63,906 nt of DNA, filler included, from Octopus bimaculoides (GCF_001194135.2; 7 parts of 7 records of this genome joined end to end with filler, not necessarily neighbours in it); one strand, 5' to 3'; positions 13,110-27,550 are shown, counted from the whole stretch's first letter. Made by a program: numbers and translations. Notes: generated from the letters alone by a model not told the origin.

Positions 13110-13350
13110 GACAGAATCATTGCCACGCTAAAGGCGGTGAACTGGCAGAAACATCAGCACGCTGGGCTAATTGCTTAGCAGTATTAAAACTGTCTTTACA
13201 TTCTGAGTTCAAATTCCGCCGAGGTCAACTTTGCCTTTCATTCTTTTGGGGTCGATAAATTAAGTACCAGTTGCATACTGGGAGTCGATCTAATTAACTG
13301 GCCCCCTTCCCAAAACTTTTGGGCCTTGTGTCTAGAGGAGAAAAGAATAT
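13110..13350 (+). mobile_element. SINE family B (tRNA-derived, ATT tail)
   Basis: ggtga.ctggcagaa...ctgagttcaaattccgccgaggtc.actttgcctttcat...gataaattaagtaccag...ggccttgtg; more than 20 copies in the window. Confidence 0.85.
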
Positions 13351-13617
13351 TTAAGTGGGTGGAAAAGCGATTTTATGCTAGAGATAAGCAGAGATAGAGG
13401 TGTCTTGCTCTAGTAAAGATGCCTGGCTACCCCACATTTATATGAGTGAGGATGAGAGTATCAAAGAAAAGATAAGATGGTAGTAATGGGGTACCAGCGA
13501 ATAACATTCAAGAAGCATCATCATCATCGTCATCATCATCATCGTCATCATCATCATAATCAAACTATTTTACACATTGCACTGTTGCTAACTTTCATTG
13601 AATAATTTCTATTTTAG

Positions 13618-13702
13618 GCAGTTGTTCAAAATAAAGATCTTCAAAAAATGTATGCTTTTGAGTGCCAGTCACAATGTGTTGGGAAACAAAAGTTAGAAGA
13701 AT
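13618..13702 (+). CDS. Exon 3A: AVVQNKDLQKMYAFECQSQCVGKQKLEE
   Basis: Acceptor ttctattttAG, 85 nt open, donor T|GTAAGA (phase 0 to 1). A paralogous exon lies at 17267. Confidence 0.8.
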
Positions 13703-14434
13703 GTAAGATTTTGTCTTAGAACTTTTCTTTATTCTTCTCTTTTTAGCTTTTCTATCTCTTTAAATTCCTCAAGGAATACTCTTAACATACACATGCGTGC
13801 ACGCATGCAAACACACACACACACACACACCAACATACACACAGCATAGTAATTGTAAGATTCCTATGCTCAACTACAAAAATCAATATTATGCGACCAG
13901 ACTTTATTGTTGCTATTCAAACCCTTGGAAAGACACATTATTCTACATTTAGTGGTTCAATTCACAGTTGTGCTGTCAGCAATGAGAAACAAAAACAAAT
14001 GTAAAGTCAATATCTCCAATCAATCACGGATCATCATCATCATCATCATTGTTTAACGTCCGCTTTCCATGCTAGCATGGGTTGGACGATTTGACTGAGG
14101 ACTGGTGAACCAGATGGCTGCACCAGGCTCCAATCTGATCTGGCAGAGTTTCTACAGCTGGACGCCCTTCCTAACGCCAACCACTCTGAGAGTGTAGTGG
14201 GTGCTTTTTTGCAACAACTCTTCCAGCTAATGTTCAATATAAAAGTAATATTTTCTAAAATGGCTAAAGCAATAATGTTGTTCTGATTTTAAGAATTTGG
14301 TAAAATACTTAAAGCTTGATGTACTGAATGATGAATACAAAAGAAATCTTAATTGGAATTTCATGTTTTGATGGAGAANNNNNNNNNNAAATTTTGCTGT
14401 AATTGATGTCAAGTTTTTTTGTATTACTTTCTAG

Positions 14435-14640
14435 GGATACACTGGAACCTTGAAGTTATTCACAGTGAGATAAACGACAGTTATGACTATTCTATTGAGA
14501 TAAGGCCTTATGGTGAAAACAAAATAATGTTTAAAACAAATTCTAGAACATCAAACACATCATTCTTCCTGCCCACGAAAATGAATAGAAAGTCAAGAAT
14601 GGAGTTATTAACTACAGGAAAATTTTGGCCAGAAAAGATT
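14435..14640 (+). CDS. Exon 4A: WIHWNLEVIHSEINDSYDYSIEIRPYG...GKFWPEKI
   Basis: Acceptor tactttctAG, 206 nt open, donor ATT|GTGAGT (phase 1 to 0). The near-identical copy at 18491 differs mostly at silent sites. Confidence 0.85.
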
Positions 14641-15084
14641 GTGAGTAAACCCTTTATTTTATTTATATATATATATATATTTTTTTTTTTCAGTTAAAAA
14701 GGAATATAACTGGTTGATTCAACTTCAATTTATTACTTGTTTCCAAGGTTTCTAGATTTGAGAAAATACAGTAAGATATATACATGTATGCACACATATG
14801 AATCAGTAAAACACACTGATGTGTATTGATGATTATTTTTTCCTTTTTTAGAAAGCAGGTAGTTTGGATGAATGACTCAACATCACTGTTTTGTGTTCAC
14901 TTCATGCCAGGCCTAAATTTGCCATTTACCCTTTGTGTTGTTTAGTAAAACAAATAATACCAAAATGCTTTTTCAATTCTGTAATCTCAGTCGACTTGAA
15001 ATCTGTTTTTATTCATAATCAAAAGGAATATCATAGCTTATGTCATGTTAACATGTTGAAATATTAATAAATATTGATGTATAA

Positions 15085-15298
15085 TCTTTTCTACTCTAGG
15101 CACAAGGCCTGAAATTTTGGGAGAGGGGGGTGCGGTCGATTAGATCGACTCCGGTATGCAACTGGTACTTAATTTATCGACTGCGAAAGGATGAAAGGCA
15201 AAGTCGACCTCCGCAGAATTTGAACTCACAAAGTAAAGACAGACGAAATACCGCTAAACATTTCACCTGGCGTGCTAATGTTTCTGCCAGCTCATCAC
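15085..15298 (-). mobile_element. SINE family B
   Basis: Reverse complement of the family B consensus. Confidence 0.85.
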
Positions 15299-15619
15299 AT
15301 TATAAATATTGATGTATTATGTACAATTTGTTAACTACATGTTATGTGTGTGAATTAATGAACTGTCAAATATTTCTTTATATAATTTAGAACATAGCAG
15401 TTACAAGAATTATCTCTTAGAGAGAAGGTTAAGAGATGAAAATTATTTTCTCAAATGTGGGCCTACAGACACATTGTGTCTGGCTGCTATAAGAAGAAAA
15501 AATAGCAAAGAATTTTTGGCTTTTATAAGCCTACCAAGAAAATGTAGAATTTTCCGTTAAGCCTTTAGAAGTGAACATAAAACTTTGCAGTTATACAATT
15601 ACTGCCTACCATAAACTAA

Positions 15620-15975
15620 TGTGGAGACGCAATGGCCCAGTAGTTAGGGCAGCAGACTCACAGTCATAGGATCACAGTTTCAATTCCCAGATCAGGCATT
15701 GTGAGTTTTATTGAGAAAAAATACCTAAATCTCCACGAGGTTCCAGCAGGGGGTGGTGGCAAACCCTGCTGTATTCCTTCACTACAACTTTCTCTCACTC
15801 TTTCTTCCTGATTCTGCTGTACCTGTATTTCAAAGGAGCAGCCTTGTCACACTCTGTGTCACACTGGATCTCCCCAAGAACTATGTTAAGGGTACACGTG
15901 TCTGTGGAGCAGGCTGTTCCGTTGATCGGATCAACTGGAACCCTTGTCGTTGTAACCGATGGAATGCCATAACCA
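15620..15975 (+). mobile_element. tRNA-derived SINE family C
   Basis: A-box-like tggcccagtagttagg and B-box-like gtttcaattccc, followed by a ~300 bp non-tRNA body. It is a single copy here. Confidence 0.65.
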
Positions 15976-17266
15976 TAAACTAATATCACAGATGCTTGGT
16001 TAGATATTACAAATACAACTACAAGCAACAAGAAAATAACAACGGGTGTCTTTCGACTAATAAAGATGAATCGAATTGAGCTGGCATGTGTAGAGTGAAA
16101 GAAGGAACATAGGAGATGAACATAAGGGATGAAAGTCATGAGACAGGAACATAAGAGATGCTTCGCAGCTGGCAGTCAAGCCAAGAAAGAAAGATCATAC
16201 TTGGCCGAACATGGGTCATGTGGAAAGAAAGGGGAGGGGTAGGTGGCAGAGGGATTGAAGAATAGGAGAAGAACAAGAAAGAAGGAAAATCAAAGGGACA
16301 TGGAGAAAGGTACAAGGGAGATAAATGAGGAGGAAAAGAAATGTGAGAAGGAGGGAGTTAGAAAAATAAAAGAAGAAAGAAAAAAGTCCAAGGGGGACTA
16401 AACAAAAGAGTAAAAGAGTCATGCGGAATTTAGATACATACTTACTCACAAGGTGAGCAAAAGTGTACACACACCACTATATGTATATATAAATCCAAAA
16501 ATATGGAACAAGAATGCAATAGATGACAATAAAACATCTGGACAGATAGATGATTCAAAGACAGACAGGAAAACAACAAAAAGATGGACAGGTAAAAAAA
16601 GGATGAGTCATTCTCAGTCTTCTCTCATCAGTCAAGTTTCCAAATCATCCTTACGGTTTCCGCTGGTTACACTTGAGACTGTTCAAATCTGGTTGGCCCC
16701 AAAAATCTAAGCTAAGAGTATTAAATTTTGGGGGAGAAAACAAGCAAATGTGTACAACAACAAAGACAAAAAAGAACAGAAAAACTGAGAGAATGTTACA
16801 CAATTACATATACAAGCAGCAAGATGAATCAAATTGAGCTGGTGTGTGTAGAGTGAAAAGCCTTGAGGCAGGAACATCGCTCAGCCTGTAAGTTATGCCT
16901 AAAAGAGGCATTCGACATATTAAAACATAACTCTTCAATACTACTAAATAAGTATAATGAGGCCCTAGGTACATGCAACCACCGCTGTTTTCATACCTTC
17001 AAATTTTTCCACAGATCTGATTGCAACCTAAATCACTGCACAGTGCATATACCAAATACACCTTAGGCAACCTCCAACAACCTGATTTGACTTTCCAATT
17101 ACTTAATTTTTTAATTGTTTAATAATATATATATTATAAATATATATATATGATGATGATGATGTTCATCCTCATCCTCATCATCATCATCATCATCATC
17201 ATCATCACAATCAAACTATTTTATACATTGCACTGTTGCTAACTTTGTTGAATAATTCTATTTCAG

Positions 17267-17351
17267 GTATTTGTTCAAAATGAAGATCTTCAAGAAACAT
17301 ATGCTGTTGAGGTCCTGTCAAATTGTTCTGAAAACCAGAAATTAGAAGAAT
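17267..17351 (+). CDS. Exon 3B (duplicate of 3A): VFVQNEDLQETYAVEVLSNCSENQKLEE; GC donor
   Basis: Acceptor ttctatttcAG, same 85 nt length, open frame. The donor is T|GCAAGA instead of GTAAGA, so its use is uncertain. Confidence 0.6.
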
Positions 17352-18490
17352 GCAAGACTTTTGCTTTATTCTTTATTCTTCTCTTTTTTACTTTGTTTTC
17401 TCTCTTAACCTCCTTAAGGAATACCTTTAACACACACATGCACTTACACACACATACACATGCACACACACATACACATGCACGCACACACACACACACA
17501 CATGCACACATACACATGCAAGGAAGCATAATAATTGCAAGATTAATATGCTCAACTACAAAGATTAATATTATGAGACCAGATTTTATTGTTTCCATTC
17601 AATCCCTTGGAAAGACACATTATTCTATATTTAATGGTTCAAGTCATAGTTGTGCAGTCAGCAATAAGAAAGAGAAACAACTGTAAAGTCAATATCTCCA
17701 GTCAACCCAAATCATTATAGAAATTTGCAACAACTCTTCCAGCTAATGTTCAATATAAAAGCAATATTTTCTAAAATGGCTAAAGCAATAATGTTGTTCT
17801 GATTTTAAGAATTTGGACAAATAATTTAAGGGGTTGATGTACTGAATGATGGATGCAAGAGAATTCTTAATTAATTAAAATTTTATGTTTTGATGGAGAA
17901 GGAAAGAAATGTCTCATTGCAATTGTTAGTGACTCTCAAGAGAAAGGGGAGATAATTTTAATCAATTATGAATTCAGGAAAAAAATCTGATCTTAATTTA
18001 CAAGCAAGGGGACAACTGTGGACTGAAACTGAAAGCACATGGATGCAAAGCAAGCTTTTTAACCCCACAGCCATGCCTGGGTATTTTTAATGTTTATACA
18101 TTAAAAATAGAGAGCAGGGTGTATAGAAAAAGTATAAGGAATAGAAAAGGGATGATATTTAAAATTGTTTGAAAAGCACTGTTTAGTGCATTTGGTACCA
18201 AACTGCCAGAGATAGTATGTGTACAATTTACACATAAGACTATTTAAAGTTTTTAAATCTTCTCATGCCATTGTTTACTATATAAATGAATAAATAAATC
18301 TAAATAGATTTCAAATGAAAAGAAATGTAATAAATCTATGATAGAAGAGCAGAGAAAATAAATGTCTTTTCGATCATCTGTTGATAGTTTCATTCTAAAT
18401 ACCCCTCATTCTAAATACAATTATCCGTTTGTTTATTAACTTTGAAGTTTTGCTGTCATTAATCTCGAGTTTTTTTCTATTACTTTCTAG

Positions 18491-18696
18491 GGATACACTG
18501 GAACCTTGAAGTTATTCATAGTGAGATAAACGACAGTTATGACTATTCTATTGCAATAAGGCCTTATGGTGAAAACAAAATAATGTTTAAAACAAATTCT
18601 AGAACATCAAACACGTCATTCTTCCTGCCCACAAAAATGAATAGAAAGTCAAGAATAGAGTTATTAACTACAGGAAAATTTTGGCCAGAAAAGACT
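18491..18696 (+). CDS. Exon 4B (duplicate of 4A)
   Basis: Acceptor tactttctAG, 206 nt open, donor ACT|GTGAGT. It has 7 nt and 3 aa differences from 4A. Confidence 0.8.
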
Positions 18697-20014
18697 GTGA
18701 GTAAACCCTTTAATTTATTTATTTATATATATATATTTCCAGTTAGAACGGAATATAACTGGTTGATTCAACTTCAATTTATTGATTGTTTCCAGGGTTT
18801 CTAGATTTGAGAAAATACAGTAAGATATGTACATGCATGCACACATATGAGTCAGTAAATCAAAATGTTCTTCGTGACACTAATGCTTTCTTGTTTTTCA
18901 TGCGAGGGAGATTTCTTTCCACTTGTCTTTGAGAGTACAGAGCCATTGGACAACTTTCTGACAGAAATTTCAACAAGCCTCACCATCTTTCGCTCACCTC
19001 AGTGCAGAATGTAATCAGTTACACAGATACACACATGCATGGTGCTAGCGATAGAGAGGTTCTCATGTTCTTGACCAGACTGAAAGGTTCTCTTGACCTT
19101 GCGTTGTCTTCAGTCAATTGCTAACACCTTTACAGAGTGCACTGGATGCATTTTATCATGACACCAAAACTAGTAAGATTGCCTTCTGCTTTCATTAGTT
19201 TATGTTGTGTGTCTCCACTGAATGCAATGTATCAGAGTGGATAGCAGGTAGAGTGATGGTGGGTGCAAACTAGAATGTGTTTGAGGAAGGGGCCAGGTGT
19301 ATGATAGCAGAAACAAAAAGAAGGGAGTAAAGGGGTAACAAAAGACAACAGAGAAGGAATGTTGACTGCATTGAAACAGAGGACAAGACTGGATGTAGTC
19401 AAAATTGAGTACAGATAGTTTCAGTGCCACTCTTTATAACAGAAGCATAATGGCAGAGAGTAAGGAAAGAAAGAGAGAAGGGGGTAAGAGTGTGAGAGAG
19501 ACAAGAGGGTAGACAGGTTTAATAACATCCCTACATTGGTTGCATGGTACAGAGATCAAGAGAGATTCACTGTTATCATTAGTTAGACAGGCTGCAGATG
19601 GATAATAGAGAAATGAGTGATAGAGAACTGATAAAGAGGTGAGATGATATATCAAGAGGCAGTCTAGGCATCTTATGTAGATCCAAAAGGGGGAATAGAA
19701 TAGGTAAGAGACCCAAATGTAGACAAGTTATATCTACCAGACTTCGTCACTAACTCTATTTCAACATTCAGTTCCACATGAATTTATGATTTAGAATAGA
19801 ATATTTTCAAGTTGAATATATTAAGATGACAAGACCAGGTTCTGTCCCCGATGCCGTCATTTGTGGATTAATATAATTCCTTTATGTTGTTTTAATTTTA
19901 TTAAATCATGCCTTTGCCACAGGGAGAAAATCTAGTAGTTGGTAGCTTCCACTACCTAGGTGACCAAGTTAATAGTGGGGGGGGTGCATTGAAAGTGTAG
20001 CTGCTAGAATAAGA

Positions 20015-20950
20015 ATAGAATAACAGCCATGCTACATGGCAGTGAAATATGGGCCATGACTGCTGAGGACATGCGCAAGCTTGCAAGAAACGAAGCCAGT
20101 ATGCTCCAATGGATGCGTAATGTCAGTGTGCATACTAGACAGAGTGTAAGTACCTTGAGAGAAAAGTTAGACCTAAGAAACATCAGTTGTGGCGTGCAAG
20201 AGAGACGATTGCGCTGGTATGGACATGTGGCAAGAATAGATGAGGATAGCTGTGTGAAAAAGTGCCACACCCTAGCAGTTGAGGGAACCTGTGGAAGAGG
20301 TAGACCCAGGAAGACCTGGGATGAGGTGGTGAAGCATGACCTTCAAACTTTAGGCCTCACTGAGGCAATGACCAGTGACCGGGACCTTTGGAAATATGCA
20401 GTACATGAGAAGACCCGGCAAGGCAAGTGAGAGCATNNNNNNNNNNNNNNNNNNNNNNNNNNNNNNNNNNNNNNNNNNNNNNNNNNNNNNNNNNNNNNNN
20501 NNNNNNNNNNNNNNNNNNNNNNNNNNNNNNNNNNNNNNNNNNNNNNNNNNNNNNNNNNNNNNNNNNNNNNNNNNNNNNNNNNNNNNNNNNNNNNNNNNNN
20601 NNNNNNNNNNTGCATTGCCTTCTAGCACTTGTGCTGGTGGCACGTTCGAAAATCATTTGAGCGAGGTCGTTGCCAGTGCCGCTGGACTGGCTCCCGTGCA
20701 GGTGGCACGTAAAAAATACCTTTTTGAGTGTGGCTGTTGCCAGTACCGTGTGACTGGCCCTCGTGCCGGTGGCACATAAAAGCACCCACTACACTCTCGG
20801 AGTGGTTGGCATTAGGAAGGGCATCCAGCTGTAGAAACTCTGCCAGATCAGATTGGAGCCTGGTGCAGCCTTCAGGCTTGCCAGTCCTCAGTCAAATCGT
20901 CCAACCCATGCTAGCATGGAAAGTGGACGTTAAACGATGATGATGATGAT
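20015..20950 (+). mobile_element. RTE-clade LINE 3' end (5'-truncated ORF2 C-terminus, 3' UTR tandem units, (GAT)n tail)
   Basis: ORF 20029-20430 reads MLHGSEIW...RRLRWYGHVARIDED...RGRPRKTWDEVVKHDL...DRDLW, which is the typical RTE C-terminus. Confidence 0.9.
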
Positions 20951-21174: not shown

Positions 21175-21268
21175 ATCAGACTGAAGAATCTGGAAACTTC
21201 CATTATATATTCCTGTAGTTATATTCTTAAACAAAGGACTCATTATCATGAATGTTCACAGAGAAATG
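21175..21268 (+). CDS. Exon 5: IRLKNLETSIIYSCSYILKQRTHYHECSQRN
   Basis: Long T-rich acceptor ending ctttAG, 94 nt open, consensus donor G|GTAAGT (phase 0 to 1). The L-x-N-L...Y-x-C pattern resembles Ig/FN3 E-F strands. Confidence 0.85.
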
Positions 21269-23852: not shown

Positions 23853-24085
23853 ATCTTGTGTGGATAATAGAACTAACCACTCATTCCAAACTAATTAGCC
23901 TCATCACACAAGTAAAGATATTTGTTGGAGTGACCAGCAATGGAACAAACTCTTCACAAGGACTAACATTCAGAAAGTTAGCTTATTTCCCCACATTCTC
24001 TGCTCCCACCAATATTGGAACCGTAAGCATTGATGAGGTTGAAATATACTTTGAAGATTATAACAAATCTTTTGATATATCCAAA
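23853..24085 (+). CDS. Exon 6: DLVWIIELTTHSKLISLITQVKIFVGVTSNGTNSS...YNKSFDISK
   Basis: Strong acceptor tctcttttgtAG, open frame, donor AAA|GTGAGA (phase 1 to 0). An alternative in-frame donor ACC|GTAAGC lies at 24023, so the 3' end is ambiguous. Confidence 0.75.
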
Positions 24086-27456: not shown

Positions 27457-27550
27457 ATTGTCATGACAAGAATACTTACAGGAGAAGAATATGGTTGTGT
27501 TAACATACATAAGACAATCCCAGCTAAATATTCATGTAAACTACAGAAAA
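27457..27550 (+). CDS. Exon 7: IVMTRILTGEEYGCVNIHKTIPAKYSCKLQK
   Basis: Acceptor attttttcAG, donor A|GTAAGA (phase 0 to 1). Same 94 nt length as exon 5, with Y-x-C and the second Cys at identical positions (12-14 and 27). Confidence 0.8.

What the first reader, a model, noticed from the sequence alone, without database searches (positions are those of the whole stretch)
13515..18860. Out-of-register exon-pair duplication creates a chimeric domain whose short exon diverged almost only by replacement changes
Seen in the sequence: exons 3 and 4 (phase 0 in, phase 0 out) are tandemly duplicated, so the frame is kept whether one or both copies are used. Modules are built from a long exon plus a short exon (2+3, 4+5, 6+7), so reading straight through gives 2+3A, 4A+3B and 4B+5. 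The 4A+3B unit is a new hybrid of module 2's first half with module 1's second half. Exon 3A vs 3B differ at 19 of 85 nt and 12 of 28 aa, and only 2 changed codons are silent. Copy 3B loses one Cys and gains an N-C-S sequon. Exon 4A vs 4B differ at only 7 of 206 nt (3 aa). By eye, the intron just upstream of exon 3 is more conserved than exon 3 itself. Inference: 3B was under positive selection (for a new partner half-domain or a binding surface) while exon 4 was constrained or gene-converted. Alternatively the pairs are mutually exclusive cassettes that diversify a surface receptor.
Basis: partly seen in the sequence, partly recalled or inferred. Interest (0 to 1): 0.8.

Follow-up and report, generated by a model that had tools for sequence, protein, structure and literature searches.

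The report
Old in-frame exon-pair duplication, octopus receptor
An octopus gene for a cell-surface protein carries a real, ancient tandem copy of two neighbouring exons that adds one extra protein module; the striking contrast between the two exon pairs comes from gene conversion, not from positive selection, so it is a tidy but ordinary case of repeat growth.

Summary
Exons 3 and 4 (85 + 206 nt, phase 0 to 0) occur twice, in units 13516-14810 and 17167-18859. The window is Octopus bimaculoides LOC106873081, an uncharacterised type I membrane glycoprotein built of ~100-residue modules. All three RefSeq isoforms read 2-3A-4A-3B-4B-5. The orthologues in O. sinensis (gap-free locus) and O. vulgaris have the same four exons and the same read-through models. 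The duplication is therefore older than these species and is not an assembly artefact.

The assembly gap lies in intron 3A. Its two sides are colinear with O. sinensis, and about 77 nt are missing.

Positive selection on 3B is not supported. 3A versus 3B gives dN/dS = 1.0, both copies changed about equally, and the copies group by orthology (7-9 differences between species, 15-19 between copies). Exon 4 groups by species instead (7 differences within O. bimaculoides, 17-24 to orthologues). Its segment was therefore homogenised by gene conversion.

3B has a GC splice donor and lacks one conserved Cys in all three species. No annotated isoform supports mutually exclusive use.

Verdict: a new member of a known kind, of modest interest.

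The parts
9431..9485 (+). Exon 1 (coding part): start codon and signal peptide MLVLSFWSILFFVFLHFT; donor ACAG|GTAAGT, phase 1 out
   Evidence: identical to the N-terminus of O. bimaculoides LOC106873081
11254..11447 (+). Exon 2 (194 nt, phase 1 to 0): long exon L1 of module 1
13516..14810 (+). Repeat unit A of the tandem duplication. It starts in a (CAT)n microsatellite and ends 170 nt after exon 4A.
   Evidence: same end point in O. sinensis (L005 7652)
13618..13702 (+). Exon 3A (85 nt, phase 0 to 1): short exon S1 with the family's conserved C-x3-C; GT donor
14024..14207 (+). SINE-like insertion in intron 3A, absent from unit B and present in many copies elsewhere in the window and in related loci
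14379..14388 (.). Assembly gap inside intron 3A. The flanks are colinear with gap-free O. sinensis DNA, and about 77 nt are missing.
14435..14640 (+). Exon 4A (206 nt, phase 1 to 0): long exon L2
14427..14677 (+). Minimum tract of concerted evolution (gene conversion) in unit A; the partner tract in unit B is 18483-18733
   Evidence: 12 'species-specific' informative sites and 0 'orthology' sites here, against 25:3 the other way at 13510-13800 (p = 8e-8); distances
14807..16302 (+). Spacer sequence with no counterpart in O. sinensis: repeat elements plus some ancestral intron-4 sequence
16303..17166 (+). Spacer between the two units that is shared with O. sinensis (L005 7652-8796) and O. vulgaris
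17167..18859 (+). Repeat unit B of the tandem duplication
17267..17351 (+). Exon 3B (85 nt, phase 0 to 1): the first Cys of C-x3-C is replaced by Val; carries an N-C-S sequon
   Evidence: part of all annotated proteins
17352..17363 (+). GC splice donor of exon 3B (gcaagacttttg), identical in three Octopus species
18491..18696 (+). Exon 4B (206 nt, phase 1 to 0): a second copy of long exon L2
21175..21268 (+). Exon 5 (94 nt, phase 0 to 1): short exon S2 with C-x12-C
23853..24085 (+). Exon 6 (233 nt, phase 1 to 0): long exon L3. Isoform X2 uses an internal donor at 24022|24023.
27457..27550 (+). Exon 7 (94 nt, phase 0 to 1): short exon S3. The rest of the gene (module 4, transmembrane helix, tail) lies beyond the piece.

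Best explanation
The window holds the 5' two thirds of Octopus bimaculoides LOC106873081. This gene belongs to an octopod family of single-pass type I membrane glycoproteins. Their ectodomain is a chain of ~100-residue beta-sandwich modules, each encoded by a long exon (phase 1 to 0) followed by a short Cys-bearing exon (phase 0 to 1).

Before O. bimaculoides split from the O. sinensis/O. vulgaris lineage, a segment of a few kb running from intron 2 to intron 4 was duplicated in tandem. Because exons 3 + 4 together are phase 0 to 0 and 291 nt long, the copy is in frame. The mRNA reads 2-3A-4A-3B-4B-5, which adds 97 residues, that is one extra module, to the ectodomain.

Afterwards the two halves of the repeat had different histories:
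- The exon 3 segment (exon 3 plus roughly 100-170 nt downstream) has not been exchanged between copies and keeps the old divergence. This includes a GT-to-GC donor change and the loss of one conserved Cys in 3B.
- The exon 4 segment has been homogenised between copies by gene conversion, most recently in the O. bimaculoides lineage, and is also under purifying selection.

Shown here: the duplication, its age, the mosaic, the constraint on exon 4, and the annotated read-through. Inferred: that both pairs are constitutively spliced in, that the long+short exon pair is the folding unit so that 4A+3B is a hybrid module, and that the hybrid folds.
For: Identity of the gene:
- The spliced window exons give a 386-aa open frame.
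- This frame is 100% identical to O. bimaculoides LOC106873081 isoforms X1 and X3, and to X2 apart from its alternative exon 6 donor.
- All three isoforms contain both exon pairs.

Age and reality of the duplication:
- O. sinensis LOC115217897 (locus L005, no gaps) and O. vulgaris CAI9731462.1 (locus L006) have 3A-4A-3B-4B in the same order.
- Repeat unit A ends at the same point in O. sinensis.
- Their annotated proteins read through both pairs.
- Of 26 family proteins aligned, only this orthologous pair has the insert.

Mosaic history:
- Exon 3 groups by orthology: winA-sinA 7, winB-sinB 9, and A versus B 15-19 of 85.
- Exon 4 groups by species: winA-winB 7/206 against 17/203 and 24/206 to orthologues (p = 0.036 and 0.002).
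- Informative sites switch from 25:3 in favour of orthology (13510-13800) to 0:12 (14427-14677), p = 8e-8.

Function of both copies:
- GT/GC donors and AG acceptors are intact in all 12 exon copies, and the GC donor context of 3B is identical in three species.
- Indels in 4A of O. sinensis (3 nt) and O. vulgaris (15 nt) keep the frame.
- Exon 4 dN/dS is 0.23-0.44 between orthologues (pooled p = 0.003) and 0.18 between 4A and 4B.

No excess replacement change in exon 3:
- dN/dS between 3A and 3B is 1.02.
- Derived changes number 9 on 3A and 7 on 3B.
- Orthologous pN of 0.114 matches the intron divergence of 0.125.
- The homologous short exon 5 has pN 0.159.

Module architecture:
- Alignment A3.
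- AlphaFold2 gives all-beta modules with uniformly high confidence over L1+S1, residues 23-110.
- Foldseek's best domain-level matches are PLAT/LH2 and C2 sandwiches of about 115-120 aligned columns.
Against: - No transcript reads could be inspected. Inclusion of 3B and 4B rests on gene models from three or four annotation efforts, not on junction counts.
- The GC donor of 3B sits in a weak context (T at -1). From general knowledge such donors are often alternatively used, so part of the mRNA may skip a pair.
- Exon 3 shows no purifying selection at the protein level in either copy, so sequence conservation alone does not prove that 3B is translated.
- AlphaFold2 gave pLDDT 21-31 for the 3B-4B stretch, because only two alignment rows cover it. 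Nothing can therefore be said about whether the hybrid module folds.
- The direction and number of conversion events are not resolved. The 'species-specific' sites prove exchange after speciation in at least one lineage, not necessarily only in O. bimaculoides.
Confidence: 0.8

Rival explanations
1. After the duplication, exon 3B evolved under positive selection to fit a new partner half-domain or a new binding surface, while exon 4 was simply constrained.
For: - 3B differs from 3A at 12 of 28 residues and has lost a Cys that is at least 90% conserved in the family.
- Between orthologues nearly all changes in 3B are replacements (Sd 0.5, Nd 8.5).
- The exon 3 segment has escaped the conversion that homogenised exon 4, as would be expected if mixing 3A and 3B were harmful.
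Against: - dN/dS between 3A and 3B is 1.02, with pS 0.223 and pN 0.227.
- 3A has as many derived changes as 3B, and between orthologues 3A shows the same pattern (Sd 0, Nd 7).
- Pooled over both copies, the excess of replacement over silent changes is borderline and depends on one silent change (p = 0.04 to 0.20).
- pN equals the intron rate.
- The intron just downstream of exon 3 is as diverged as the exon, so the effect is regional, not coding-specific.
- The low divergence of exon 4 is due to conversion, because within-species copies are closer than orthologues.
Confidence: 0.1
2. The two exon pairs, or exons 4A and 4B alone with 3A, are alternative cassettes. Transcripts carry one or the other and so diversify the receptor. 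The weak GC donor of 3B is the regulatory switch.
For: - All three one-pair forms (2-3A-4A-5, 2-3B-4B-5, 2-3A-4B-5) stay in frame and open.
- The GC donor with T at -1 is conserved in three species. From general knowledge, GC donors are enriched among alternatively spliced introns.
- Tandem exon duplicates are often used in a mutually exclusive way (PMC9013439).
Against: - None of the annotated isoforms in O. bimaculoides (X1-X3), O. sinensis (single model) or O. vulgaris omits a pair.
- Including both pairs keeps the frame, so nonsense-mediated decay cannot enforce exclusivity.
- The 4A-3B intron is 2.6 kb, so there is no steric block.
- In O. bimaculoides 4A and 4B differ at only 3 residues, which would give little diversity.
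Confidence: 0.12
3. Unit B, or exon 3B alone, is a dead duplicate. It would be a pseudo-exon with a broken donor and a lost Cys, swept into gene models by prediction software.
For: - The GT-to-GC donor change, the loss of a conserved Cys and the neutral-looking dN/dS of exon 3.
Against: - The GC donor and its 12-nt context, the acceptor and the open frame of 3B are kept in three species.
- 3B has not accumulated more changes than 3A.
- 4B is under purifying selection: sinB-vulB 0.26 and winB-sinB 0.42.
- Skipping 3B alone breaks the frame, giving 16 stops.
- Independent annotations include it: NCBI models for two species, the UniProt entry A0A0L8ID93 for O. bimaculoides, and the O. vulgaris annotation.
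Confidence: 0.05
4. Assembly artefact: two haplotypes of one exon pair placed in tandem around the gap.
For: - There is a 10-N gap inside unit A, and the window has eight assembly gaps in all.
Against: - 4A, the spacer, 3B and 4B lie on one gap-free stretch, 14389-20436.
- The copies differ by 5-22% and by a SINE insertion.
- The same arrangement exists in the gap-free O. sinensis locus and in O. vulgaris, with 3A and 3B each grouping with their orthologues.
Confidence: 0.01

Closest known systems
Tandem exon duplication that lengthens a repeat protein (internal domain-repeat expansion)
   Same: - Adjacent homologous exons lie in one gene, in the same orientation and with symmetric phase, so the copy is in frame. 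The result is one more module in a chain of homologous modules.
- About 10% of animal genes are reported to contain tandemly duplicated exons (PMC9013439, introduction).
   Different: - The duplicated unit is a pair of exons that straddles a module boundary (short exon of module 1 plus long exon of module 2). The new module is therefore a hybrid of two older, homologous modules.
- This is also the outcome expected from unequal crossing-over between repeats, but it is rarely pointed out exon by exon.
Mutually exclusive exon clusters derived from tandem duplication (e.g. Dscam1, tropomyosin; PMC9013439, PMC9741552)
   Same: Duplicated exons of the same length and phase, of tandem origin, in a cell-surface protein.
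   Different: - Both copies are in series in every annotated isoform.
- No frame, steric or other feature that would enforce exclusivity was found.
- The unit is two exons, not one.
Concerted evolution by intragenic gene conversion with mosaic tracts
   Same: One part of the repeat is more alike within a species than between orthologues, and a neighbouring part keeps the old divergence. The switch in informative-site pattern is sharp.
   Different: Here the tract covers the constrained long exon and spares the fast-evolving short exon. This creates a false appearance of accelerated evolution in the short exon.
GC-AG introns
   Same: A GC donor paired with an AG acceptor, +3 to +5 AAG as in the consensus, conserved between species, and used in annotated models.
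   Different: Position -1 is T rather than the usual G, so it is a weak example. It arose in one copy of a duplicated exon, whereas seven other copies of that exon in the family keep GT.

Membership tests
In-frame tandem exon duplication (constitutive) | Two adjacent homologous exon sets in the same orientation inside one gene | tested here: met
In-frame tandem exon duplication (constitutive) | The duplicated block is symmetric in phase and a multiple of 3 in length | tested here: met
   85 + 206 = 291 nt, phase 0 to 0; the read-through frame is open over 386 aa
In-frame tandem exon duplication (constitutive) | Both copies keep splice sites and open frames across species | tested here: met
   12 exon copies in three species; 3B uses a GC donor
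In-frame tandem exon duplication (constitutive) | Both copies are present together in mature mRNA | not testable with these tools
   Only annotated protein models could be read; all of them include both pairs. No reads were available.
Mutually exclusive exons | A mechanism that prevents joint inclusion (frame shift, steric hindrance, incompatible splice sites) | tested here: not met
   Joint inclusion keeps the frame; the 4A-3B intron is 2626 nt; all sites are GT/GC-AG. Competing RNA structures were not searched for.
Mutually exclusive exons | Isoforms that carry one copy or the other | tested here: not met
   No such isoform among the annotated models of three species. RNA data were not examined.
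Gene conversion / concerted evolution | Paralogous segments within a species are more alike than each is to its orthologue | tested here: met
   Exon 4: 7/206 within against 17/203 and 24/206 between species
Gene conversion / concerted evolution | A mosaic with a switch of phylogenetic signal along the repeat | tested here: met
   Orthology:species-specific sites are 25:3 at 13510-13800 and 0:12 at 14427-14677, p = 8e-8
Positive selection on exon 3B | dN/dS significantly above 1, specific to the 3B lineage | tested here: not met
   omega is 1.02 for A versus B; derived changes are 9 (3A) and 7 (3B); pN equals the intron rate
GC-AG intron | GC at +1/+2 with an AG acceptor, conserved in orthologues | tested here: met
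GC-AG intron | Otherwise near-consensus donor (G at -1, AAGT at +3 to +6) | tested here: inconclusive
   AAT|GCAAGA: +3 to +5 fit, -1 and +6 do not. No splice-site scoring tool was available.
False duplication in an assembly | Near-identical copies abutting a gap, absent from independent assemblies | tested here: not met
PLAT/LH2 or C2 beta-sandwich domain | Significant sequence-profile or structure match | tested here: inconclusive
   No Pfam family reaches its threshold. Foldseek gives probability 1.0 but E 0.02-0.1 for PLAT domains, on a model of mean pLDDT 65.

The most novel reading that the evidence does not exclude
The short Cys-bearing exons could be the fast-evolving recognition loops of an octopod-specific family of surface receptors that is under diversifying pressure.

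Evidence that points this way: in a paralogue pair from O. vulgaris and O. sinensis, exons are 2-5 times more diverged than their own introns.

In LOC106873081 the two versions of the short exon would then be kept distinct by selection against conversion. The conserved weak GC donor would allow regulated inclusion of the extra hybrid module. The result would be receptors of two lengths or specificities, with an unpaired Cys.
Probability: 0.12. Interest if true: 0.6.

Novelty: new member of a known kind. Interest (0 to 1): 0.3.

Why it matters
This is a clean, datable example of how a chain of protein modules grows by one unit when the duplicated block is offset from the module boundary.

It is also a warning. 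Partial gene conversion between duplicated exons can make the unconverted exon look as if it evolved under positive selection.

The gene family itself has no name or known function. It is octopod-specific as far as these searches show, clustered on one chromosome, and evolves quickly. The exon map given here would help anyone who studies it.

No long-standing question is opened or closed by this finding.

Tried and rejected
- The first protein search, with the 194-aa 3A-4A-3B-4B peptide, returned only four paralogues at 45-60% identity and missed the orthologues. At that stage I read 3B as a decaying pseudo-exon (GC donor, lost Cys, omega = 1) and 4A/4B as possible alternatives. I dropped this once the orthologous loci showed that the GC donor and the Cys loss are conserved.
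- I first took the 10% A/B intron divergence as the neutral yardstick for the age of the duplication. That was wrong, because most of the unit has been homogenised since the duplication.
- I first estimated the gap as about 544 nt by comparison with unit B. The orthologous unit A in O. sinensis shows about 77 nt.
- Pfam found no family.
- Five accession and locus-name searches of the literature found nothing.
- The AlphaFold2 model could not address the hybrid module, which had pLDDT 21-31. Exon junctions of both kinds coincide with strand starts, so secondary structure alone does not fix the domain boundary.
- hhalign between modules gave only weak, in-register similarity (E 0.01-0.04).
- A look-up of the O. 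bimaculoides protein's own contig returned nothing.
- The spacer between the units has no similarity to intron 2 or intron 4B, so the exact ancestral breakpoints remain unresolved.

Full report
**What is in the sequence**

A direct repeat is plain in the window. Unit A is 13516-14810 and unit B is 17167-18859. They align in three colinear blocks of 80%, 89% and 92.7% identity. Unit A carries a SINE-like insertion (14024-14207) that unit B lacks.

Each unit holds two open exons with standard acceptors:
- 3A 13618-13702 and 3B 17267-17351, 85 nt each.
- 4A 14435-14640 and 4B 18491-18696, 206 nt each.

- 3A/3B differ at 19 of 85 nt and 12 of 28 aa, with two purely silent codons.
- 4A/4B differ at 7 of 206 nt and 3 aa.
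- 3B has lost one Cys and carries an N-C-S sequon.

Mapping homologous proteins onto the window gives the other exons:
- exon 1 at 9431-9485
- exon 2 at 11254-11447
- exon 5 at 21175-21268
- exon 6 at 23853-24085
- exon 7 at 27457-27550

Long exons run phase 1 to 0 and short exons run phase 0 to 1. The 3+4 block is therefore phase 0 to 0 and 291 nt long. The read-through CDS is open over 386 aa up to exon 6. The three one-pair forms are open too, whereas skipping 3B alone breaks the frame.

**The gap**

The 10-N gap (14379-14388) lies in intron 3A, 46 nt upstream of exon 4A. Window 14208-14378 aligns to O. sinensis L005 7011-7183. Window 14389-14806 aligns to L005 7261-7652, and that locus has no gaps. 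The two sides are thus in the right order and orientation. About 77 nt are missing, and no reading frame crosses the gap.

Exon 4A, the spacer, exon 3B and exon 4B lie on one uninterrupted stretch, 14389-20436.

**Which gene it is**

The spliced product is identical to Octopus bimaculoides LOC106873081:
- Isoform X1 is 671 aa and is also UniProt A0A0L8ID93.
- Isoform X2 (650 aa) differs only by an internal donor in exon 6.
- Isoform X3 (648 aa) starts at a downstream Met.

All three contain 3A-4A-3B-4B in series.

The full protein has a signal peptide and an ectodomain of long+short exon modules. A transmembrane helix and a cytoplasmic tail follow.

Relatives were found only in octopods: O. 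bimaculoides, O. sinensis, O. vulgaris and Argonauta hians. A search of 1.84 billion representative proteins gave 22 proteins. No Pfam family matches.

An AlphaFold2 model of the O. sinensis orthologue (mean pLDDT 65) is all-beta. Its best domain-level Foldseek matches are PLAT/LH2 and C2 sandwiches, with weak E-values.

**The duplication is old and shared**

The orthologues O. sinensis LOC115217897 (XP_036363780.1, locus L005) and O. vulgaris CAI9731462.1 (locus L006) are colinear with the window at 85-92% identity. They carry the same four exons in the same order. Their annotated proteins read through both pairs. Of 26 aligned family members, only these two have the extra 97 residues. The paralogous loci L001-L003 have single copies of exons 3 and 4.

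This rules out an assembly artefact. It also places the duplication before the split of O. bimaculoides from O. sinensis/O. vulgaris.

**Why exon 3 looks fast and exon 4 slow**

Pairwise distances among the six copies, A and B in three species, give opposite pictures for the two exons.

| Segment | Same copy, O. bimaculoides vs O. sinensis | A versus B within a species | Groups by |
|---|---|---|---|
| Exon 3 (85 nt) | 7 (3A), 9 (3B) | 15-19 | copy (orthology) |
| Exon 4 (206 nt) | 17/203 (4A), 24/206 (4B) | 7/206 in O. bimaculoides (p = 0.036 and 0.002 against the two between-species values); 19/203 in O. sinensis | species |

The 150 nt downstream of exon 3 behave like exon 3.

Informative sites along the unit switch sharply:
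- 25 'orthology' to 3 'species-specific' at 13510-13800.
- 0 to 12 at 14427-14677 (p = 8e-8).

The exon 4 segment has therefore been exchanged between the copies after speciation, most recently in the O. bimaculoides lineage. The exon 3 segment has not been exchanged.

The elevated divergence is regional. The 80 nt of intron after exon 3 differ at 15 of 75 sites, the same rate as the exon. The well-conserved stretch just upstream of exon 3 is conserved across the whole family.

**Selection**

- Between 3A and 3B, pS is 0.223 and pN is 0.227, so omega is 1.02.
- In this A+T-rich exon 68 of 84 sites are replacement sites. A preponderance of replacement changes is therefore what no selection at all would give.
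- Polarising the 19 differences with five outgroup copies assigns 9 to 3A, 7 to 3B and 3 to neither.
- Between orthologues both copies show almost only replacement changes: 3A Sd 0 and Nd 7; 3B Sd 0.5 and Nd 8.5.
- The pooled replacement rate (0.114) equals the intron rate (0.125, p = 0.89). The excess over silent changes rests on about 32 silent sites (p = 0.04-0.20).
- The homologous short exon 5 changes even faster, with pN 0.159.

Exon 3 is therefore a weakly constrained or fast-evolving part of a fast-evolving gene, in both copies alike. There is no signal specific to 3B.

Exon 4 is constrained:
- omega is 0.23-0.44 between orthologues (pooled p = 0.003) and 0.18 between 4A and 4B.
- Indels in 4A of the other two species keep the frame.

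**Features of 3B**

Its donor is GC (GAAT|GCAAGACTTTTG). These 12 intronic bases are identical in the three species. The three orthologous 3A copies and five paralogue copies of exon 3 all have GT.

The first Cys of the C-x3-C motif is conserved in at least 90% of family members. In 3B it is replaced in all three species, by V in O. bimaculoides and by G in the other two. These are old, retained features, not recent decay.

The N-C-S sequon is specific to O. bimaculoides.

In O. sinensis and O. vulgaris exon 4B carries an extra Cys (GKSCPEK). O. bimaculoides 4B lacks it (GKFWPEK), in line with its 4A-like sequence. By the module logic this leaves Cys200 without an obvious partner; that last point is inference.

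**Is 4A+3B a hybrid module?**

Three observations favour long+short as the folding unit, in which case 4A+3B is a hybrid of module 2's body with module 1's tail:
- The mature protein starts with a long exon directly after the signal peptide.
- It contains four long+short units before the stalk.
- AlphaFold2 confidence is uniformly high across L1+S1 and drops at the start of L2.

This is inference. Both kinds of exon junction coincide with the starts of strands. No coordinates could be inspected. The 3B-4B stretch was modelled at pLDDT 21-31 because only two alignment rows cover it.

Because S1 and S2, and L1 and L2, are themselves distant homologues (weak), the hybrid amounts to a recombinant between two related modules. 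That is the usual product of unequal exchange in a repeat array.

**Comparison with what is known**

Tandem exon duplication is common: about 10% of animal genes are reported to contain it (PMC9013439). It is known both as a source of repeat growth and of mutually exclusive exons (PMC9013439, PMC9741552).

This case fits the first kind on every feature I could test. For the second kind it lacks both a mechanism that would enforce exclusivity and any annotated one-pair isoform. The GC donor leaves room for some regulated skipping, which only RNA data can settle.

**Verdict**

- It is partly wrong: positive selection on 3B.
- The gene models that include both pairs are already in public annotation, but the duplication and its mosaic history do not appear in the literature I could search.
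- I rate it a new member of a known kind, of modest interest.

Noticed in passing
L003 (O. vulgaris) versus L004 (O. sinensis LOC115218105), exons 2, 3 and 4: In this paralogue pair the exons are 2-5 times more diverged than their own 400-nt flanks. Exon 2 is 34/192 against 33/795 (p = 2e-9). Exon 4 is 18/209 against 13/773 (p = 6e-6), with Sd 0.5 and Nd 14.5. The 50-60 nt (104 aligned sites) directly flanking exon 3 on the two sides are identical, while the exon differs at 20 of 84-88 sites. This is an exon-faster-than-intron signature. It could reflect diversifying selection or exchange with other paralogues.
   Followed up: partly
L004 38257-42837 and 59832-64225: O. sinensis LOC115218105 has a second 4.4-kb copy (90-92% identical) of its exon 3 region, downstream of exon 4. 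The copy starts exactly at a 100-N gap. It could be a parallel exon duplication or an assembly problem. The O. vulgaris counterpart (L003) shows only one copy.
   Followed up: partly
L002 30572-30796 and 40001-40225: The O. vulgaris locus of P0001 has two exon-6-like open frames about 9.4 kb apart (64% identity to the window's exon 6). This is either another internal duplication or the next gene of the cluster.
   Followed up: no
window 24022/24023: RefSeq isoform X2 of LOC106873081 uses an internal donor (ACC|GTAAGC) inside exon 6. This removes 21 residues (VSIDEVEIYFEDYNKSFDISK) in frame.
   Followed up: partly
window 14641-14697 and 18697-18804; L001, L004: The O. sinensis models P0002 and P0004 end by reading through the exon 4 donor into the intron (…VSKPF…). 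The same read-through frame is open for 19 and 36 codons after 4A and 4B in the window. This may point to short secreted isoforms that end after exon 4.
   Followed up: no
C-termini of family proteins (beyond the window): P0046, P0007: Several family members end in a conserved tyrosine motif (…PIYEELT, …IHIYEELA). A YEEL motif suggests phosphotyrosine signalling. I did not examine it further.
   Followed up: no
window 18866-19898: This stretch of intron 4B has no counterpart in the O. sinensis or O. vulgaris orthologues, but it matches intron 4 of the paralogues (L001 21722-22680, L003 61874-62907). It is therefore ancestral intron sequence that the other lineage has lost.
   Followed up: partly
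window 13138-13350 and 15081-15294; 14024-14207; 20022-20436 and other sites: The window is dense in repeat elements: SINE-like units in both orientations and a ~415-nt element with many copies in related loci. It has eight assembly gaps. Microsatellites, (CAT)n and (CA)n, sit at the left edge of both repeat units and inside them.
   Followed up: no
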